From the NCBI GenBank assembly GCA_021613535.1, contig CP075497.1:5208001-5272000 (forward strand): a DNA stretch of 64,000 bases, given 5' to 3'. This DNA comes from Adineta vaga (lineage: Eukaryota > Animalia > Rotifera). Made by a program: the position numbers and the translations under genes. Within the stretch, counting starts at the first letter, position 1. Each line of letters starts with the position of its first letter. The notes beneath the pieces are model-generated. The model saw only the letters and a list, made by a program, of their open reading frames with translations. It was not told where the DNA came from and did no database searches. Shown here one piece after another: positions 16,420 through 22,400 of the stretch.

Positions 16420-19400
16420 TTAATGAAATGTTCTTTGATCGTGGAGAAAACTAGAAGCATCAATATCCATACCCATATAATCATCACGCATATAGGTATG
16501 TGGTTCTCTAAAAAGTAAAATCATACAATTAAATTTCGAAATTGACTAATTTATACAATCAAGAAAGTTTTACAAAGAATATTATTCAGGAACACCATGT
16601 CTTCGCATTGTTGTGTTATTAGTTTGTGAACGATTAGTATTTCGAGTATTCGTATTAGTTAAGTCAAGTCTTGCAAAAGGTTTACTAAATTATTGATAAC
16701 ACACAAAACATATTTTGTTAGTAAAAATATAACTTTGAGTTATTTATTTATTTTTTACCTATCAATATCCATATCAGCACCACTATTGATTGAATTCCAA
16801 TGATTAACATCTGGTGATTCTCGACCATCTATCGGATATCCATCTAGAAACATAGCGTTAATAAAGATTAATGATAAAATTATTTCTCTTGTCTTTATCT
16901 TCATACCATCGTAACCAAATTGATCAAGATAATCATCTTGTCCAGCAAGTGCCATAGAATCAAAGCCGTAAGGTTGTGCATTATTTACAGGTGATGATTC
17001 ATCATCTTCATATGAAACTTGTTGTCCTTCGATCGATTCAAGCCATGCTTGATTATGATTTCGAAAACGCGCAATTTTAATACGACCAGCCCATTCGGGA
17101 TCATATTCCTAAAGATAAAGAACATTCTTTATTGATATCAATATAACTATTGAATGTACATACACTGATAATTTCTAATGTTATATCACAAACACGTCGA
17201 ACTTCCTTATTTTTATCTTGCATAAGGTCAATTAGATAAGCCGGGGCATCTATATATTATTCAAAACATCATGATCAATTCATACTATCGAAGAGTTCTT
17301 ACCAGTCTTCTTAATAACTACATGTCGAGTTGATTTATGGAAACAAAGCTGATAAAATACATAGCATATTTGTAAAACAACTTCATCATCTTCTTGTTGT
17401 GCTAGAACACATTATTCTTCTTAGAATCTGAAATATAATCAATATTAATTATAAGAAAACTTACCATGTAAAAGTTCAATAAGAATCTGAATAATTCCAC
17501 TCTTAGCTAAAACTTCCGCACATGCATCATCAGCACAAAGTGTACCAACAAGAATGACAATATTCAATGATAATTCATCATCACTTGATCCAGGTTTTAA
17601 TTTTGATTTAATCCAATCAACTAATCCATATTCACTCATCAAAGCTTGATAGTCAATATCTGGTATTGTTAAATTTGCTAAAGTTCCAACGACTTCTGTA
17701 AGAAATGCTTCATCACTTTCCGTAACTAAAGTTTCACCTAATGGTCCAACAAATGTCTAAAGAATAAATTCAAATCAATAAATAAAACTAAATTAATTTG
17801 TCTTTATTACAATAAATTGATTTTTGATATCCGGTGATGCATGTGATGAAATATTTCGTATCATTTTCATAACTAATGAATCTTTGTATTTATAAGCTCG
17901 TTTCATTAGTAATTTTAAACCTTTGCCATGTTTATAATCACATAATTGTTCGGCACAACCAGCATTCAATGCAAGATTAATTGCAAGAGCAATAACTTCT
18001 GGCTCAAGAGTATCTTCTTTACAATCAACAATAAGTTTCATTAACTAAAATATTTCATTGAAATGTTTCTCATTCGAAAAAACAAAGACTTACTTGTTGA
18101 TTACATTTTGTATAGGTAAAATATGCTTTTGTACGATCATCCATACTTAAATGATATAATAAACATAAACAAATCAAACGTTGATTTTCATCATCTATTC
18201 ATTAAAAAAAAACTATTAACATTATCTTTTGATTAGAAAAGTGAAACTTACCAATTAAATCGACTAATTTTGGCAATAAACCAATACGAACAATTTGTGC
18301 ACGAATATCACGATCAAATGATAAATTCAATAAAAGACGAAGAGTTATATTTAATAAATCAGCTTGTGAACATGGAATTAATCGTGCAATTTTCATAACC
18401 AATTTTTGATCACGCTAAATAGATTATCAAATATGCAAGAACAACATCATCCATATTTATTCATTGAACGATATTTCTTATCATGATCCTGAAAAAACGC
18501 GAATTCAATCAATATCTTAATACCTTATCTTATATGACTATTTATCAATTTATTATAGTCAGAAAAATATAGTAGAAATAATGTGTAATAAATTTTAAAA
18601 AAGCCTATTGAAAATAGGTCGAACTACAATCTATATCTGTCAAAACACACACGCAGACACACAAACTACATTTCTGACAAAGTCGAATGACTTCGTTGTA
18701 AAACTTAGAGAAAATAAATAAATATCTTATCAATGAATATTAACTAAGACAATCATTGCCTAGAACTCCTTCATCATCAATAACATCGAAATAAACCCGA
18801 GGAAGTGCACAACCTAGTGCTGCAACAAGTGGTTCTCTTTTCAATTGACATATATTCAGAACAGTTTGTCCTAGAATTGATTGTAAAAATAAAGTTAAAT
18901 CTTGAGCAGCTTGCTGTTCTAATTGAAATAATTCTCCAGTTAACATACAATATTTGATCGATGGATAAAGTTTTGTTATTAATTTTATTGTTAAAGCGAT
19001 ATTCATTGTAAACATTGATAATAGAGATCGACGCATTGCTAAACGTGTTTGTAATGATGAAGATTGAATAAAACTATCATCTGTTTGTGTATGAACATCA
19101 AATGTACAAATATTTTCATCATAGGAAGCATTTCGTCGATTAGACCAACCACGATAGATATAATGTGGTTTATCCGAAAGAGTATAATCATCGGGAAACA
19201 ATCGATGTGATAAACGAGTAAAACTTGTGATTGGAATTTGTAATGAATGAATAGAAGATGAACGATGACAATTTTTACATAGATCTTGTGAAGTAACATC
19301 AAATGATGGAGGTGGAGATCGACGATATGTATATGATGATGATAGATAATTAGTTGTCGATGATAATAGTGGTGGTGGTGGTGGTGGTGATGAACTAGAT

Positions 19401-22400
19401 TGAATGATATATTGAGATAGAATATGAATGATGAATGTGTTACTTACATTTGTTCATCAGTTTTCGAATCAAAACCAGGTTGAAGTAGTTTTGTTAGATT
19501 AGAATATGTTTTATAACATAAATTATTTGAGGTGACTACAGAATATCGATTGGATGAATGAACAATATAAAAAAAAGTACTAGCAACTTCAGCATGAACA
19601 AGTATATAAGGATAAATCTGATGTTTTTCATGTTGTTTTTCATGATTAGAATTAATTATTTCAAATAGATCATTTTCATGTTGTATACGTTTTTGTTTAT
19701 AAAGTAAAAAATCGACACCAATCATATAGGATTCTGCACGATATTGTATAATATCAAAATTTAAATTGATTTTATTTAAACGTGAAGAAATTTTTACTTC
19801 ATATTCATTTGTTTGTTCACCAGTTAAGGCAATATTAAGAACAAATGATGATGCTAATGAAGAATTATAATTAATAAATGATTGTAAATGTATTAGAATC
19901 AGTTGAAATTCATCGTGTGTTAATGAAAATAAACGAAAATTTGCTTCTTGTTCGGTTATTGTTCGTAAATCAACATTTAATATTGACCAATCATTATGCT
20001 CATGTTCAAGGATTAATGAAATAAGATAACGTTGAAAAACAATTGTGGAATAATTAACATTTTGAGGATAGAGTTCTAACAAAACAAGATGTACACCAGT
20101 GCTTGTTATATTCAAACCAATTGCTGGTACGTCACATGGCGATAAAGAATAATGATCAGTTGTTTCATCAGTGATTGTTTTATTTGGTTCAGATGTTGAA
20201 GATAACAATGATGCTGATGAGAAAAAGAAAAGAAAATCATTGTAAAACTTTGTTTTTCATTGTTAACTCGATTATTCTCTTCATATAGACTTCGAGCATA
20301 TCCTATGTATCTCACAGATCTTAGTACGAGTGTTAATTGTAAACCTTCAAGATTTGCTAAGATAATTAATGTACATGTCTTGATTTCGTACAACAGATGT
20401 AGAATAAATAGCTTTTAATTGATGATTTCTTTAAGACTTATTCTCTGTATAGAAGAAAAAGTGTTTCCGATCTTAGTCGATTAAATATGAGAATTATACT
20501 AATATTTTTAGATTGCTTTCTCGAATTACATGAATGATATGATCCTTGTTAATTCAATATGTCTGTCCTTAAAATGAAAATAATCAATATTTATGTAAAT
20601 CGAGTTCTTTTTTTTTCTCATGAAAACTGTTAATATTTTCTTTTTATATAACTGAAGGAAATAAAAAAATATTCAGTCTCAATATTTTTCGATTGGATTT
20701 TATTTATTTATTTATTAGTTTAAATGTCTAGACACTGATCGAAATCAAAAAGAAAAAAATGACTTACTAGTTGATTTTACTTGTGATGGAAGTTGTTCGT
20801 CAATAATAATTACTTGAGTTTCTTGTTCTGCTACTGTCGATATGGAAGAATTTGTTCGAGATGAAAATGGAGATGAATTGGTTGAAGTCGACGATAGAAG
20901 ATCACCTCCATCCATAGATAAAAAACTTGAATAATGCGATGTCGATCTTTGATCATCAAATTTTTTTGATAAAGGTGGCGATTCCACTTCTTCAACATGA
21001 GTTTTATCAGGTTTCTTGACATTTTTACCTTTTGATAATAGTTCAGCGAGTTCAGTTACTGTTTCAAGTGTTTTGATTGGTCTTGTTATTGTTATATTTG
21101 ATTTACTTGCTGATGGACCACGTTTTGGTTTATAAAAATAATCACTATGTTCAGTACGGAGTCTATCAAATGAACGTGGCGATAATGAACGATGAAAGAA
21201 ACCTGTATGAGTTTCATTTCTCATATCACCTTCGTCTCCACTTGTTGTTGCCATTTGTACAAATTATCACGATAATAAAAGGAGACGAAGATCTACAAGT
21301 TGTCTAGATTCTGTTGTTTCTCTCGAATATAATAAGAGATATGACACATTTTTTATATCGAATAAACATAATGTCATAAAAGCTGATTATCATATATACG
21401 ATCTCAAAAGGTGAATAGGATCAGATGTCATCGCGAAAAAAGAAGTGATCGTTGTGTAATTGTCATCACATACATGAAGAAAAAAAATCTCTAAGTTACA
21501 TGATGATGATGATCATCATCATCGCCGCATATAAAAGAAGAGAATTTAAATCGTCAATAAACCTCGAAAATCAAATTCAATTCTATCTTGAAAAAATTGA
21601 AGATCAAGTTCTTTTACTTCTTAAACTAATAAGAAAGAAAAACGAAATGATTTGTCATAGTTTCATTTGTTAATTTAAACGAGAGAAAAATCGAGAGAGA
21701 GAGAAAAGACATTTGTTGTTGTTAGTACTACCAAACTTGCTAAGATGTCAGATGAAATCTGTCTTTTTTCTCTCTTATGCTAGTTATTGCTGTTCTGTCA
21801 TTGATTGGTGGCTGCTATCTAAGTTTTTTTTTTTCTGTTGTTGTTTTGTCTGAGTTTACAACGAGAAAAGATATGACTCAAGGAGAATATCAAAGTAAAG
21901 AGGAATACGAGTATAAGTAATGCCTTATAAAAACATACTGAATATCGTAGATCTAGTCATTGTTTGAGTACTCATAACATAAAAATTATATTTATCTTAC
22001 GATTGATGAAACGAACAAAAGAAGTTACTGTATTTACTTGTCTGACTGACAAAGACAAAGAAAAAGAACTCAAGTAATATTTATATATTCGAACGAAGTT
22101 ATATATTCTTTCGTTCTCATCATGTATAGAGTAAATGATGAAGATGGACAGGAACAGTGATACTGACAATGATCTTAAACTAATGCATTGATGAATATAC
22201 TAACCCTTGAAGAAACGAACGAGATTGTTCTGACGAAACAGAGAGAGAAAAAAAACACATAGATGCATGTTCATTTATTAAGACCTGATTAATCATCATT
22301 ACTACTCATTTAGAAGAAAAGAAAATCATATCTATACGAACAAATTCTCATTGAAAACTATAATTAACAAAGAAACAAAAGATCAAGCGTCCCCTGTGAA

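What the first reader, a model, noticed from the sequence alone, without database searches (positions are those of the whole stretch)
18740..21254. Intact pantothenate-kinase-like pseudoenzyme with every catalytic motif eroded
Seen: three exons splice into an uninterrupted 635-aa ORF. From recalled eukaryotic type II PanK motifs, the blocks are present in order but the Gly-rich and catalytic residues are replaced: DIGGTLVK->NITSTGVH (phosphate-1 loop), TGGGA->TGEQT, NIGSGVS->HAEVAST, GTSLGGGTF->[20 protein letters not shown]->[12 protein letters not shown]. Structural blocks such as YPYILV and TMNIA persist. It also has a ~170-aa Ser-rich N-terminal extension and a Pro/Ser-rich insert in the middle of the fold. 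Inference: a retained, non-catalytic PanK paralog that could act as an acyl-CoA sensor, scaffold or dominant regulator of active PanK dimers. It lacks the C-terminal phosphatase domain of PANK4, so it is not the known pseudo-PanK.
Basis: partly seen in the sequence, partly recalled or inferred. Interest (0 to 1): 0.8.

Follow-up and report, generated by a model that had tools for sequence, protein, structure and literature searches.

The report
Bdelloid-only dead pantothenate-kinase paralog
Bdelloid rotifers carry, beside their normal vitamin-B5 kinase, a transcribed and conserved copy that keeps the kinase's shape but has lost its ATP-binding glycine loops, so it is most likely a non-catalytic regulator whose role in coenzyme A metabolism is unknown.

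Summary
A three-exon, minus-strand gene (21254..18740) encodes 635 aa. Transcript contigs from two studies skip intron 1 exactly, and one contig's length fits removal of intron 2. Relatives in other bdelloids carry the same protein as single uninterrupted ORFs.

Sequence similarity to pantothenate kinase is below threshold (Pfam Fumble 22.4 bits against a cut-off of 28.5). An exhaustive profile search of 1.84 billion proteins found only 27 proteins, all family members. Two AlphaFold models of natural relatives nevertheless match eukaryotic type II PanK well above other ASKHA kinases (Z 18.3 and 21.4 against 14.3 or less).

No Gly-rich nucleotide-binding loop survives in any of about 55 members, and Arg207 is hydrophobic. 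The catalytic Glu probably aligns with an invariant Arg.

The gene is under purifying selection (dN/dS 0.27-0.38, against 0.11 for the genome's intact PanK pair). It is kept as two ohnologs (C6 and C3). It has no DUF89 domain.

New here:
- The family is known only from bdelloids.
- The window copy sits inside an intron of the kinesin-associated-protein (KAP) gene, as it does in another bdelloid.
- The genome has no PANK4-type fusion.

Loss of catalysis and any regulatory role are inferred, not shown. The scan also flagged the C3 ohnolog separately (s1-490071).

The parts
20768..21254 (-). Exon 1. Start codon at 21254. Encodes a 162-aa N-terminal extension that is predicted disordered, with conserved motifs [12 protein letters not shown] (21156-21200), [10 protein letters not shown] (21111-21140) and NITITRPIK (21072-21098).
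   Evidence: Sequence. RNA contigs cover it. Conserved in full-length relatives. pLDDT is below 50 in the P0051 model. No Pfam or Atlas hit. Coordinates.
20214..20767 (-). Intron 1 (554 nt, GT..AG), phase 1.
   Evidence: Skipped exactly in contigs of X9 and X1. Absent in several relatives. About 90 nt long at the same position in the C3 ohnolog.
19448..20213 (-). Exon 2. Encodes the N-terminal ASKHA lobe and the start of the second lobe of the PanK-like fold. It holds the eroded motifs NITSTGVH (20089-20112; PHOSPHATE 1), TGEQT (19810-19824), YRAES (19729-19743; catalytic Asp-Glu position), [13 protein letters not shown] (19576-19614; PHOSPHATE 2), YSVVT (19531-19545; Arg207 position) and SNNLCYKTY (19504-19530; ADENOSINE).
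   Evidence: Pfam Fumble E 7.8e-5, 22.4 bits. TIGR00555 22 bits. Motif census. hhalign registers. Coordinates.
19395..19447 (-). Intron 2 (53 nt, GT..AG), phase 2.
   Evidence: Sequence. The length of X9 contig 13 fits its removal. Absent in P0045, P0047 and P0048. Same position in the C3 ohnolog.
18740..19394 (-). Exon 3. It begins with a Pro/Ser-rich segment of low confidence. Conserved motifs follow: DLCKNCHR (19262-19285), [11 protein letters not shown] (19133-19165) and [10 protein letters not shown] (19070-19099). Then comes the C-terminal part of the fold, with TMNIA (18995-19009), MLTGE (18932-18946) and [12 protein letters not shown] (18803-18838). The TAA stop is at 18740-18742. There is no DUF89 domain.
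   Evidence: RNA contig X9-13 starts at 18695, 45 nt past the stop.
17001..24819 (-). Host gene: kinesin-associated protein (KAP/KIFAP3, PF05804). Exons for profile positions 2-330 lie at 23601-24819 and exons for positions 329-684 lie at 17001-18411. The pseudo-PanK gene lies on the same strand inside the roughly 5.2-kb intron between them.
   Evidence: Six-frame KAP matches in the window's own genome. The same arrangement is seen in another bdelloid's contigs L020-L022. Splicing of KAP across the nested gene was not tested.

Best explanation
This is a real, expressed, bdelloid-rotifer-specific paralog of eukaryotic type II pantothenate kinase.

Shown:
- It keeps the two-lobed ASKHA/PanK fold.
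- It has replaced all three glycine-rich nucleotide-binding loops (PHOSPHATE 1, PHOSPHATE 2, ADENOSINE), the TGGGA turn and the pantothenate-positioning Arg207. The residue aligned with the catalytic Glu138 is most likely also replaced.
- It is transcribed and spliced as modelled.
- It is under purifying selection.
- It is kept in two ohnologous copies.
- It carries a disordered N-terminal extension of about 165 aa, rich in Ser and in R-x-x-S sites, and a partly conserved insert inside the second lobe.

Inferred:
- It cannot bind ATP or phosphorylate pantothenate in the canonical way, so it is a pseudoenzyme.
- PanKs work as obligate dimers whose active sites and acetyl-CoA sites are built from both protomers. 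The long helix that in PanK follows the insert is strongly conserved here. The most likely mechanism is therefore dimerisation, with itself or with the intact PanK encoded elsewhere in the genome. In that state it would act as a regulatory or ligand-sensing subunit of CoA synthesis, with the disordered, phosphorylatable extension as the control input.
- Several replacement residues are themselves nearly invariant ([19 protein letters not shown]). This points to a new constraint in the old active-site cleft, such as binding of another ligand or partner, rather than simple decay.
For: Gene and expression:
- Splice sites and a 635-aa frame.
- Intronless full-length relatives exist.

Fold:
- Foldseek's top 32 hits are all eukaryotic PanK1/2/3 or Cab1, best E 3.2e-14.
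- VIA-align on that model gives PANK1 alpha Z 18.3 over 275 aa and PANK3 Z 17.5, with other ASKHA at 11.8 or below.
- A second model, searched without Foldseek, gives PANK1 alpha Z 21.4 over 295 aa, Cab1 16.6, S. aureus type II PanK 14.5 and the rest at 14.3 or below.
- 28 of 30 ESM-Atlas feature hits are Fumble families.
- There are weak Pfam and TIGR00555 hits.

Motif loss:
- No member of about 55 has a Gly-rich loop.
- The canonical PanK of the same genome keeps DIGGTLVK, ATGGGA, CDEL, NIGSGIS, RR-ISGT and IGGATF.
- hhalign puts an invariant Arg at the catalytic Glu, V/I/L at Arg207 and Thr at Ser195.
- The key PanK3 residues are taken from PMC8366970.

Selection:
- Ohnolog pair dN/dS 0.38 (CI 0.31-0.47), against 0.106 (0.07-0.15) for the canonical PanK pair.
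- Distant full-length orthologs give 0.27 (CI 0.19-0.36) with dS about 1.45 and intact ORFs.
- An allelic indel is in frame.

Precedent for a motif-eroded PanK that works only as a dimer partner: the apicomplexan PanK1/PanK2 complex.
Against: - No biochemical data exist, so loss of ATP binding is inferred from motifs.
- The sequence alignments that map individual residues are not significant (hhalign E 0.008-0.07). An invariant Glu sits two residues from the catalytic position, so a shifted catalytic base cannot be ruled out.
- Model confidence is only moderate overall (mean pLDDT 64). The insert and the extension are unmodelled.
- Dimerisation, heterodimerisation and ligand binding were not testable with the tools here.
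- dN/dS is about three times that of the true enzyme.
Confidence: 0.7

Rival explanations
1. It is the bdelloid descendant of PANK4. The kinase-like domain of an ancestral PANK4 lost its DUF89 phosphatase domain and then diverged fast. It would then be a remnant of the known pseudo-PanK lineage rather than a new duplicate of the PANK1-3 or fumble type. This concerns origin and is compatible with the best explanation.
For: - The genome shows only two Fumble loci over threshold, both of PANK1-3 type.
- It has one stand-alone DUF89 gene with no Fumble part, so a PANK4-type fusion is missing.
- PANK4 orthologues are reported in animals, plants and fungi (PMC9352595).
- The top Atlas feature cluster is auto-named 'Pantothenate kinase 4'.
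Against: - Structure matches are best to PANK1 and PANK3.
- I do not know whether any solved PANK4 kinase-domain structure was in the libraries searched, so that ranking does not bear on the question.
- No shared intron position or sequence signature was found.
- The Atlas cluster name is automatic, and that cluster's members lack DUF89.
- The divergence is too great for the sequence tools I had left.
Confidence: 0.2
2. It is still an enzyme: a kinase, ATPase or other transferase with an unconventional nucleotide or substrate site, possibly acting on something other than pantothenate.
For: - The residues that replaced the motifs are themselves nearly invariant and often charged. Examples are Asn for the PHOSPHATE 1 Asp, Glu-Gln in TGEQT, Arg-Ala-Glu at the catalytic position, His-Ala-Glu in PHOSPHATE 2 and Lys in the ADENOSINE block.
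- Thr stands at the Ser195 position.
Against: - All three Gly-rich loops that hold ATP phosphates and adenosine across the ASKHA superfamily are gone in every member.
- The PHOSPHATE 1 hairpin tip is variable.
- The protein evolves about three times faster than the true enzyme.
Confidence: 0.12
3. It is a decaying or functionless duplicate whose transcription is noise from inside the KAP gene's intron.
For: - Elevated dN/dS relative to canonical PanK.
- It lies on the same strand inside another gene's intron, so reads could in principle come from KAP pre-mRNA.
Against: - ORFs of 561-635 codons are intact in lineages separated by dS above 1.4.
- The dN/dS intervals lie far below 1.
- Its own introns are spliced out precisely.
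- Both ohnologs are intact, including the C3 copy that is not inside KAP.
- About 150 invariant columns are found among seven diverse members.
Confidence: 0.03
4. The fold is a generic ASKHA domain (sugar kinase, ROK or BadF type) and the PanK resemblance is accidental.
For: - Sequence hits to Fumble are below the curated threshold.
- Profile searches of PDB sequences found nothing.
Against: - Type II PanKs take the top three places in an unbiased structure search, with a gap of 7 Z units between human PANK1 and the best non-PanK hit.
- The only Pfam and NCBIfam hits are PanK families.
- 28 of 30 Atlas feature hits are Fumble.
Confidence: 0.03

Closest known systems
Canonical eukaryotic type II pantothenate kinase (human PANK1-3, Drosophila fumble, yeast Cab1; Pfam PF03630, TIGR00555)
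   Same: Same two-lobed ASKHA fold, with the best structural matches (Z 17-21 over 265-295 residues). The sequence blocks come in the same order. The same genome holds an intact pair of such enzymes.
   Different: - No Gly-rich PHOSPHATE 1, PHOSPHATE 2 or ADENOSINE loop, no TGGGA, and no Arg207.
- The catalytic Glu is probably replaced.
- About 15% identity, and below the family score cut-offs.
- An extra 165-aa disordered N-terminus and a longer insert in lobe 2.
- Evolves about three times faster.
PANK4 (pseudo-pantothenate kinase fused to a DUF89 4'-phosphopantetheine phosphatase)
   Same: A PanK-fold domain held to be catalytically inactive, kept beside active PanKs. PANK4 is regulated by phosphorylation (AKT, Thr406; PMC9352595).
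   Different: - PANK4's kinase domain is reported inactive in amniotes (PMC9352595). From memory (Yao et al. 2019, not held in the paper library), this is through a few point substitutions, and I expect it to be readily recognised as Fumble. Neither point was checked here.
- PANK4's known activity lies in its DUF89 domain.
- This protein has no DUF89 and has lost every nucleotide-binding loop.
- Orthology to PANK4 is neither shown nor excluded.
Apicomplexan PanK2 (PfPanK2, TgPanK2) of the heteromeric PanK1/PanK2/14-3-3 complex
   Same: A second type II PanK paralog whose nucleotide-binding motifs deviate strongly, which has large insertions, and which is essential only as the partner of another PanK. 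This is the best functional analogy for a dimer-partner role.
   Different: - PanK2 contributes residues to one complete active site and is part of the only PanK activity of the cell.
- Here an apparently complete canonical PanK exists separately.
- The families are unrelated in origin (Apicomplexa against bdelloid rotifers).
- Heteromer formation is untested here.
N-terminal PanK-like domain of S. pombe Tad2 (tRNA deaminase subunit)
   Same: A kinase-like fold reported as non-functional as a kinase and reused for a structural role (PMC8217354; title and abstract only).
   Different: It is a domain fused to a deaminase, in fungi, not a free-standing protein. No relation was tested here.

Membership tests
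Type II pantothenate kinase (PF03630 Fumble / TIGR00555 panK_eukar) | Score above the curated family cut-off | tested here: not met
   Exon 2 scores 22.4 bits against 28.5 for Fumble. Only 3 of 11 family members hit Fumble at E of 0.1 or less, best 7.7e-7. TIGR00555 scores 22 bits against 247.6. The family profile finds no canonical PanK among 1.84 billion proteins.
Type II pantothenate kinase (PF03630 Fumble / TIGR00555 panK_eukar) | Two-lobed ASKHA fold closest to eukaryotic PanK | tested here: met
   PANK1 alpha Z 18.3 and 21.4, PANK3 Z 17.5, Cab1 Z 13.8 and 16.6. Non-PanK ASKHA score 11.8 or below and 14.3 or below. Foldseek E 3.2e-14. These models are of natural relatives P0048 and P0051, not of the window's joined protein.
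Type II pantothenate kinase (PF03630 Fumble / TIGR00555 panK_eukar) | PHOSPHATE 1 loop D-x-G-G-T-x-x-K | tested here: not met
   The family has N-[IV]-T-x-T-x-[VI]-H. Asn is invariant, there is no Gly-Gly, and the hairpin tip is variable. The register comes from hhalign. The canonical copy in the same genome has DIGGTLVK.
Type II pantothenate kinase (PF03630 Fumble / TIGR00555 panK_eukar) | PHOSPHATE 2 loop N-I-G-S-G-x-S and ADENOSINE G-G-G block | tested here: not met
   H-A-E-x-x-S-T and S-N-N-L-C-Y-K-T-Y across the whole family. The local hhalign over PHOSPHATE 2 gives E 0.008. The canonical copy has NIGSGIS and IGGATF.
Type II pantothenate kinase (PF03630 Fumble / TIGR00555 panK_eukar) | Catalytic Glu138 and substrate-positioning Arg207 (PanK3 numbering, PMC8366970) | tested here: inconclusive
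   The Arg207 position is V/I/L in all members. The gap-free, Gly-anchored register puts an invariant Arg at Glu138, with an invariant Glu at +2. The alignments are not significant and no residue-level superposition was available.
Type II pantothenate kinase (PF03630 Fumble / TIGR00555 panK_eukar) | ATP-dependent phosphorylation of pantothenate | not testable with these tools
   Needs an enzyme assay.
PANK4 | C-terminal DUF89 (PF01937) phosphatase domain fused to the PanK-like domain | tested here: not met
   The stop is at 18740 and the transcript contig ends 45 nt later. PF01937 is found only on chromosome C2, in a stand-alone gene. Full-length relatives end at the same place.
PANK4 | Orthology of the kinase-like domain to PANK4 rather than PANK1-3 | not tested
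The genome lacks any PANK4-type fusion, so the question stays open.
Apicomplexan-type heteromeric PanK partner (PanK2-like) | Strongly deviating nucleotide-binding motifs in a second PanK paralog | tested here: met
   compared with the description in PMC8366970. This is a functional analogy only, not common descent.
Apicomplexan-type heteromeric PanK partner (PanK2-like) | Physical complex with the active PanK, supplying trans residues (Tyr254', Tyr258') | not testable with these tools
   No multimer prediction or interaction data were available. The insert region where these residues would lie is modelled with low confidence.
Pseudoenzyme (conserved, expressed homolog of an enzyme lacking its catalytic apparatus) | Purifying selection and expression despite loss of catalytic motifs | tested here: met
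   dN/dS 0.38 (CI 0.31-0.47) and 0.27 (CI 0.19-0.36). Spliced transcript contigs come from two studies. Two intact ohnologs are present.

The most novel reading that the evidence does not exclude
Bdelloid rotifers have evolved their own dedicated, non-catalytic PanK-fold subunit. It would dimerise with the active PanK, or sense CoA or acyl-CoA in the remodelled cleft. Under control of its phosphorylatable disordered extension, it would switch CoA synthesis on or off. This would be an animal counterpart of the apicomplexan PanK1/PanK2 complex, perhaps filling the regulatory place of the missing PANK4, and possibly tied to the metabolic shut-down and restart of desiccation.
Probability: 0.2. Interest if true: 0.7.

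Novelty: new variant of a known kind. Interest (0 to 1): 0.5.

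Why it matters
Pantothenate kinase sets the rate of coenzyme A synthesis. The two known inactive or half-active PanK relatives (PANK4 and apicomplexan PanK2) both turned out to be important regulators or obligatory subunits.

This family is a third, independent case.
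- It is free-standing and far more eroded than PANK4.
- It is unannotated: databases call it hypothetical, and Pfam misses most members.
- It is known only from bdelloid rotifers, which appear to lack PANK4.
- It offers a natural experiment on what a PanK scaffold is good for once catalysis is gone.
- It is a concrete, testable candidate regulator of CoA metabolism in animals known for extreme metabolic arrest.

The result also shows that fold prediction recovers a family that an exhaustive HMM search of 1.84 billion proteins cannot link to its parent.

Tried and rejected
- PDB sequence searches found no PanK. I tried single exons and two family profiles, up to E 10.
- hhalign of the family against canonical PanK pieces gave the expected register for the N-terminal half and for PHOSPHATE 2. 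It gave no significant score (E 0.008-0.1) and nonsense for the short C-terminal exon pieces. I therefore do not claim residue-level mapping in the C-terminal half, nor for the trans residues Tyr254' and Tyr258'.
- dN/dS on near-identical orthologs had too few changes to be informative (8 or fewer per pair).
- The N-terminal extension gave no hit in Pfam, NCBIfam or the ESM Atlas.
- Cluster look-ups gave no taxon names for the unnamed metagenomic members. 'Bdelloid-only' therefore rests on the named members (Adineta, Rotaria) and on the shallow depth of the family.
- The paper defining PANK4 as a pseudo-kinase (Yao et al. 2019) is not held. I cite it only through PMC9352595 and PMC11695632.
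- The careful tree search did not finish, so only the quick tree is reported.
- The three exons were never joined. Folding and full-length searches used natural relatives instead.

Full report
**What is in the sequence.**

The window is AT-rich eukaryotic DNA, about 30% G+C. It lies at C6:5208001-5272000 of a 100.8-Mb, six-contig assembly. The named homologs of this family's members come from Adineta steineri, Rotaria sp. and Rotaria sordida.

On the minus strand I read three exons:
- 21254..20768
- 20213..19448
- 19394..18740

Both donors are GTAAGT and both acceptors are AG. The stop is TAA. An in-frame TAA lies 12 nt upstream of the ATG.

The in-frame pieces are 162, 254 and 217 aa.

All searches on the window were done exon by exon, by reference. 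Natural full-length relatives stood in for the spliced protein.

**Is the gene model right, and is it expressed?**

Contigs of public runs were laid on 18600-21400. A 1067-nt contig of X9 and a 363-nt contig of X1, from different studies, both skip 20214..20767. That is 554 nt with GT..AG on the minus strand, exactly intron 1.

A 993-nt contig of X9 covers 18695-19352 and 19448-19737, with 42 letters in between. This equals 19353-19394 with 19395-19447 removed, which is intron 2. The tool masked the CCA repeat there, so this is arithmetic and not a listed joint. That contig starts 45 nt past the stop codon.

X7 covers the introns at even depth and is genomic DNA. X7 and X9 carry a 3-nt in-frame insertion after 19332.

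Relatives in other bdelloids give independent support:
- Some run exon 1 into exon 2 with no intron.
- Some run exon 2 into exon 3 with no intron.
- Some are complete single ORFs of 561-573 codons on contigs of up to about 240 kb.

The window's three pieces align to them in order.

**How PanK-like is it?**

By sequence, barely:
- Only exon 2 hits Pfam Fumble, at E 7.8e-5 and 22.4 bits against a cut-off of 28.5.
- Three of eleven family members hit Fumble at E of 0.1 or less.
- TIGR00555 gives 22 bits against 247.6.
- Profiles of the family find nothing among PDB sequences, even at E 10.
- An exhaustive HMMER profile search of 1.84 billion representative proteins returns just 27 proteins, all at E below 1e-10 and all family members. 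It returns no canonical PanK and nothing intermediate.

By structure, clearly. An AlphaFold model of P0048 (466 aa, covering the exon 2+3 region, with a 69-sequence alignment) has mean pLDDT 64, and the first lobe is near 90.
- Foldseek's top 32 PDB hits are all human PANK1/2/3 or yeast Cab1, best E 3.2e-14.
- VIA-align gives PANK1 alpha Z 18.3 (275 residues, rmsd 4.0) and PANK3 Z 17.5.
- Cab1 scores 13.8, and glucokinases, ROK proteins and S. aureus PanK score 11.8 or below.

A second model was made of the full-length natural ORF P0051 (573 aa). Both lobes reach pLDDT 85-95. Residues 1-165 and 384-459 are below 50.

This model was searched against 48,161 chains without Foldseek. The results were PANK1 alpha Z 21.4 (295 residues), Cab1 16.6 and S. 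aureus type II PanK 14.5. Every other ASKHA protein scored 14.3 or less.

The ESM Atlas gives 28 of 30 feature hits in Fumble families. Its own model is nearest to a PanK3 cluster.

**Are the catalytic motifs gone?**

The same genome encodes two ordinary PanK genes, at C6:7.716 Mb and C3:8.575 Mb. They carry textbook motifs: DIGGTLVK, ATGGGAYKFE, CDEL, NIGSGIS, YRRISGT and IGGATF. Their first exon is 56-68% identical to PanKs of other animals.

The table below uses a census of about 55 family members.

| PanK feature | Canonical motif | This family |
|---|---|---|
| PHOSPHATE 1 hairpin | DIGGTLVK | G-x-N-[IV]-T-x-T-x-[VI]-H (Asn invariant, tip variable, no Gly-Gly, His for Lys) |
| TGGGA turn | TGGGA | T-G-E-Q-T |
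| Catalytic Asp-Glu position | CDEL | [Y/S/C]-R-A-E-[S/T]-Y |
| PHOSPHATE 2 | NIGSGIS | H-A-E-x-x-S-T |
| Arg207 and ADENOSINE stretch | YRRISGT, IGGATF | Y-S-[VIL]-[LIV][10 protein letters not shown] |

It places:
- an invariant Arg at the catalytic Glu, with an invariant Glu two residues on;
- V/I/L at Arg207;
- Thr at Ser195.

The residue roles are taken from PMC8366970. These alignments are not significant on their own (E 0.008-0.1), and I had no residue-level superposition. I therefore treat the loss of the Gly-rich loops and of Arg207 as established. The fate of the catalytic Glu is probable but open.

Many replacement residues are themselves nearly invariant. That argues for a new constraint in the cleft rather than drift.

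**Is it under selection?**

A second intact copy lies at C3:10.642 Mb (L014, 613 aa). It has the same two intron positions and phases and is 56-69% identical per exon.

Pooled Nei-Gojobori counts were taken exon by exon.

| Comparison | dN | dS | dN/dS | Bootstrap CI |
|---|---|---|---|---|
| Pseudo-PanK ohnolog pair (window against L014) | 0.254 | 0.66 | 0.38 | 0.31-0.47 |
| Canonical PanK ohnolog pair | 0.094 | 0.88 | 0.106 | 0.07-0.15 |
| Two distant intronless full-length orthologs | about 0.40 | about 1.45 | 0.27 | 0.19-0.36 |

A quick tree puts an A. steineri sequence with each A. vaga copy, at 98% support for each. The duplication is therefore older than that species split.

The protein is constrained, about three times less tightly than the enzyme.

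**Extension, insert and C-terminus.**

Exon 1 is a conserved but disordered extension. It has short predicted helices and motifs such as [18 protein letters not shown] and NITITRPIK. It is rich in R-x-x-S sites and has no hit in any library.

The region after the ADENOSINE helix begins with Pro/Ser-rich sequence. It also holds invariant blocks: [15 protein letters not shown] and [10 protein letters not shown].

The protein ends with the PanK fold. PF01937 (DUF89) occurs only once in the genome, in a stand-alone gene on C2.

This also means the genome has no PANK4-type fusion at all. PMC9352595 describes such fusions as present in animals, plants and fungi. I could not test whether this family descends from a PANK4 kinase domain.

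**Context.**

Pfam KAP (kinesin-associated protein 3) matches lie at window 23601-24819 (profile positions 2-330) and at 17001-18411 (positions 329-684). Both are on the minus strand. The pseudo-PanK gene therefore sits on the same strand inside a roughly 5.2-kb KAP intron.

Contigs of another bdelloid show KAP exons on both sides of its intronless ortholog. The C3 copy has no KAP gene around it.

**Mechanism and comparison.**

Shown: fold, motif loss, expression, selection, duplication and restricted distribution.

Inferred: no canonical ATP binding or pantothenate phosphorylation.

PanKs are dimers whose active sites are built from both protomers. The closest functional precedent is apicomplexan PanK2. 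Its nucleotide motifs deviate strongly, and it works only as a partner of PanK1, in a complex with one active site.

I think a dimerising regulatory or ligand-sensing subunit is the most likely role, with the disordered extension as the control input. This is an inference. The protein fails the membership tests for a PanK enzyme and for PANK4 (see membership rows).

**Novelty.**

I found no paper on it. A full-text search for 'bdelloid' together with 'pantothenate kinase' gave one paper that, by its title and abstract, is about another subject. Databases call the proteins hypothetical or unnamed.

It is a new, lineage-restricted variant of a known kind, the PanK-derived pseudoenzyme. The scan's first stage flagged what is almost certainly the C3 ohnolog separately: s1-490071 covers 1986 letters, which is the length of L014 927-2912.

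Noticed in passing
window 17001-24819 (minus strand); also L020-L022: The pseudo-PanK gene is nested on the same strand inside a roughly 5.2-kb intron of the kinesin-associated protein (KAP/KIFAP3, PF05804) gene. From memory, not measured here, introns in this genome are usually tens of bases long. KAP exons also flank the intronless ortholog in another bdelloid, so the nesting is conserved. Only one KAP gene was found in the genome.
   Followed up: partly
L014:927-2912 (G000:C3:10641928-10643913, plus strand): There is an intact ohnolog of the pseudo-PanK (613 aa) with the same two intron positions and phases. Its intron 1 is only about 90 nt long, and it is not inside a KAP gene. It is probably the object of first-stage note s1-490071.
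   Followed up: yes
G000:C2:9262083-9262774 (L015, L016); G000:C6:7715774-7717096 and C3:8574857-8576592 (L001-L012): The genome shows two canonical multi-exon PanK genes (an ohnolog pair) and a single stand-alone DUF89/ARMT1-like gene. It has no PANK4-type Fumble+DUF89 fusion. Bdelloids may therefore lack PANK4.
   Followed up: partly
window 19332 and 19353-19399: An allelic 3-nt in-frame insertion (ATG on the plus strand) is seen in a DNA run and a transcript run. It lies next to a (CCA)n repeat that encodes the poly-Pro start of exon 3.
   Followed up: no
L017:1964-3655, L018:6001-7686, L020:3001-4722, compared with window 18740-21254: Intron content varies within the family. Adineta copies have two introns. 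Several relatives lack intron 1 or intron 2, and some are fully intronless. In the window copy, intron 1 has grown to 554 nt.
   Followed up: partly
window 18434-19154 (run X5 contig): One contig of a run guessed to be RNA runs unspliced from exon 3, past the stop codon, toward the next KAP exon. It may be KAP pre-mRNA, a read-through transcript or contaminating DNA.
   Followed up: no
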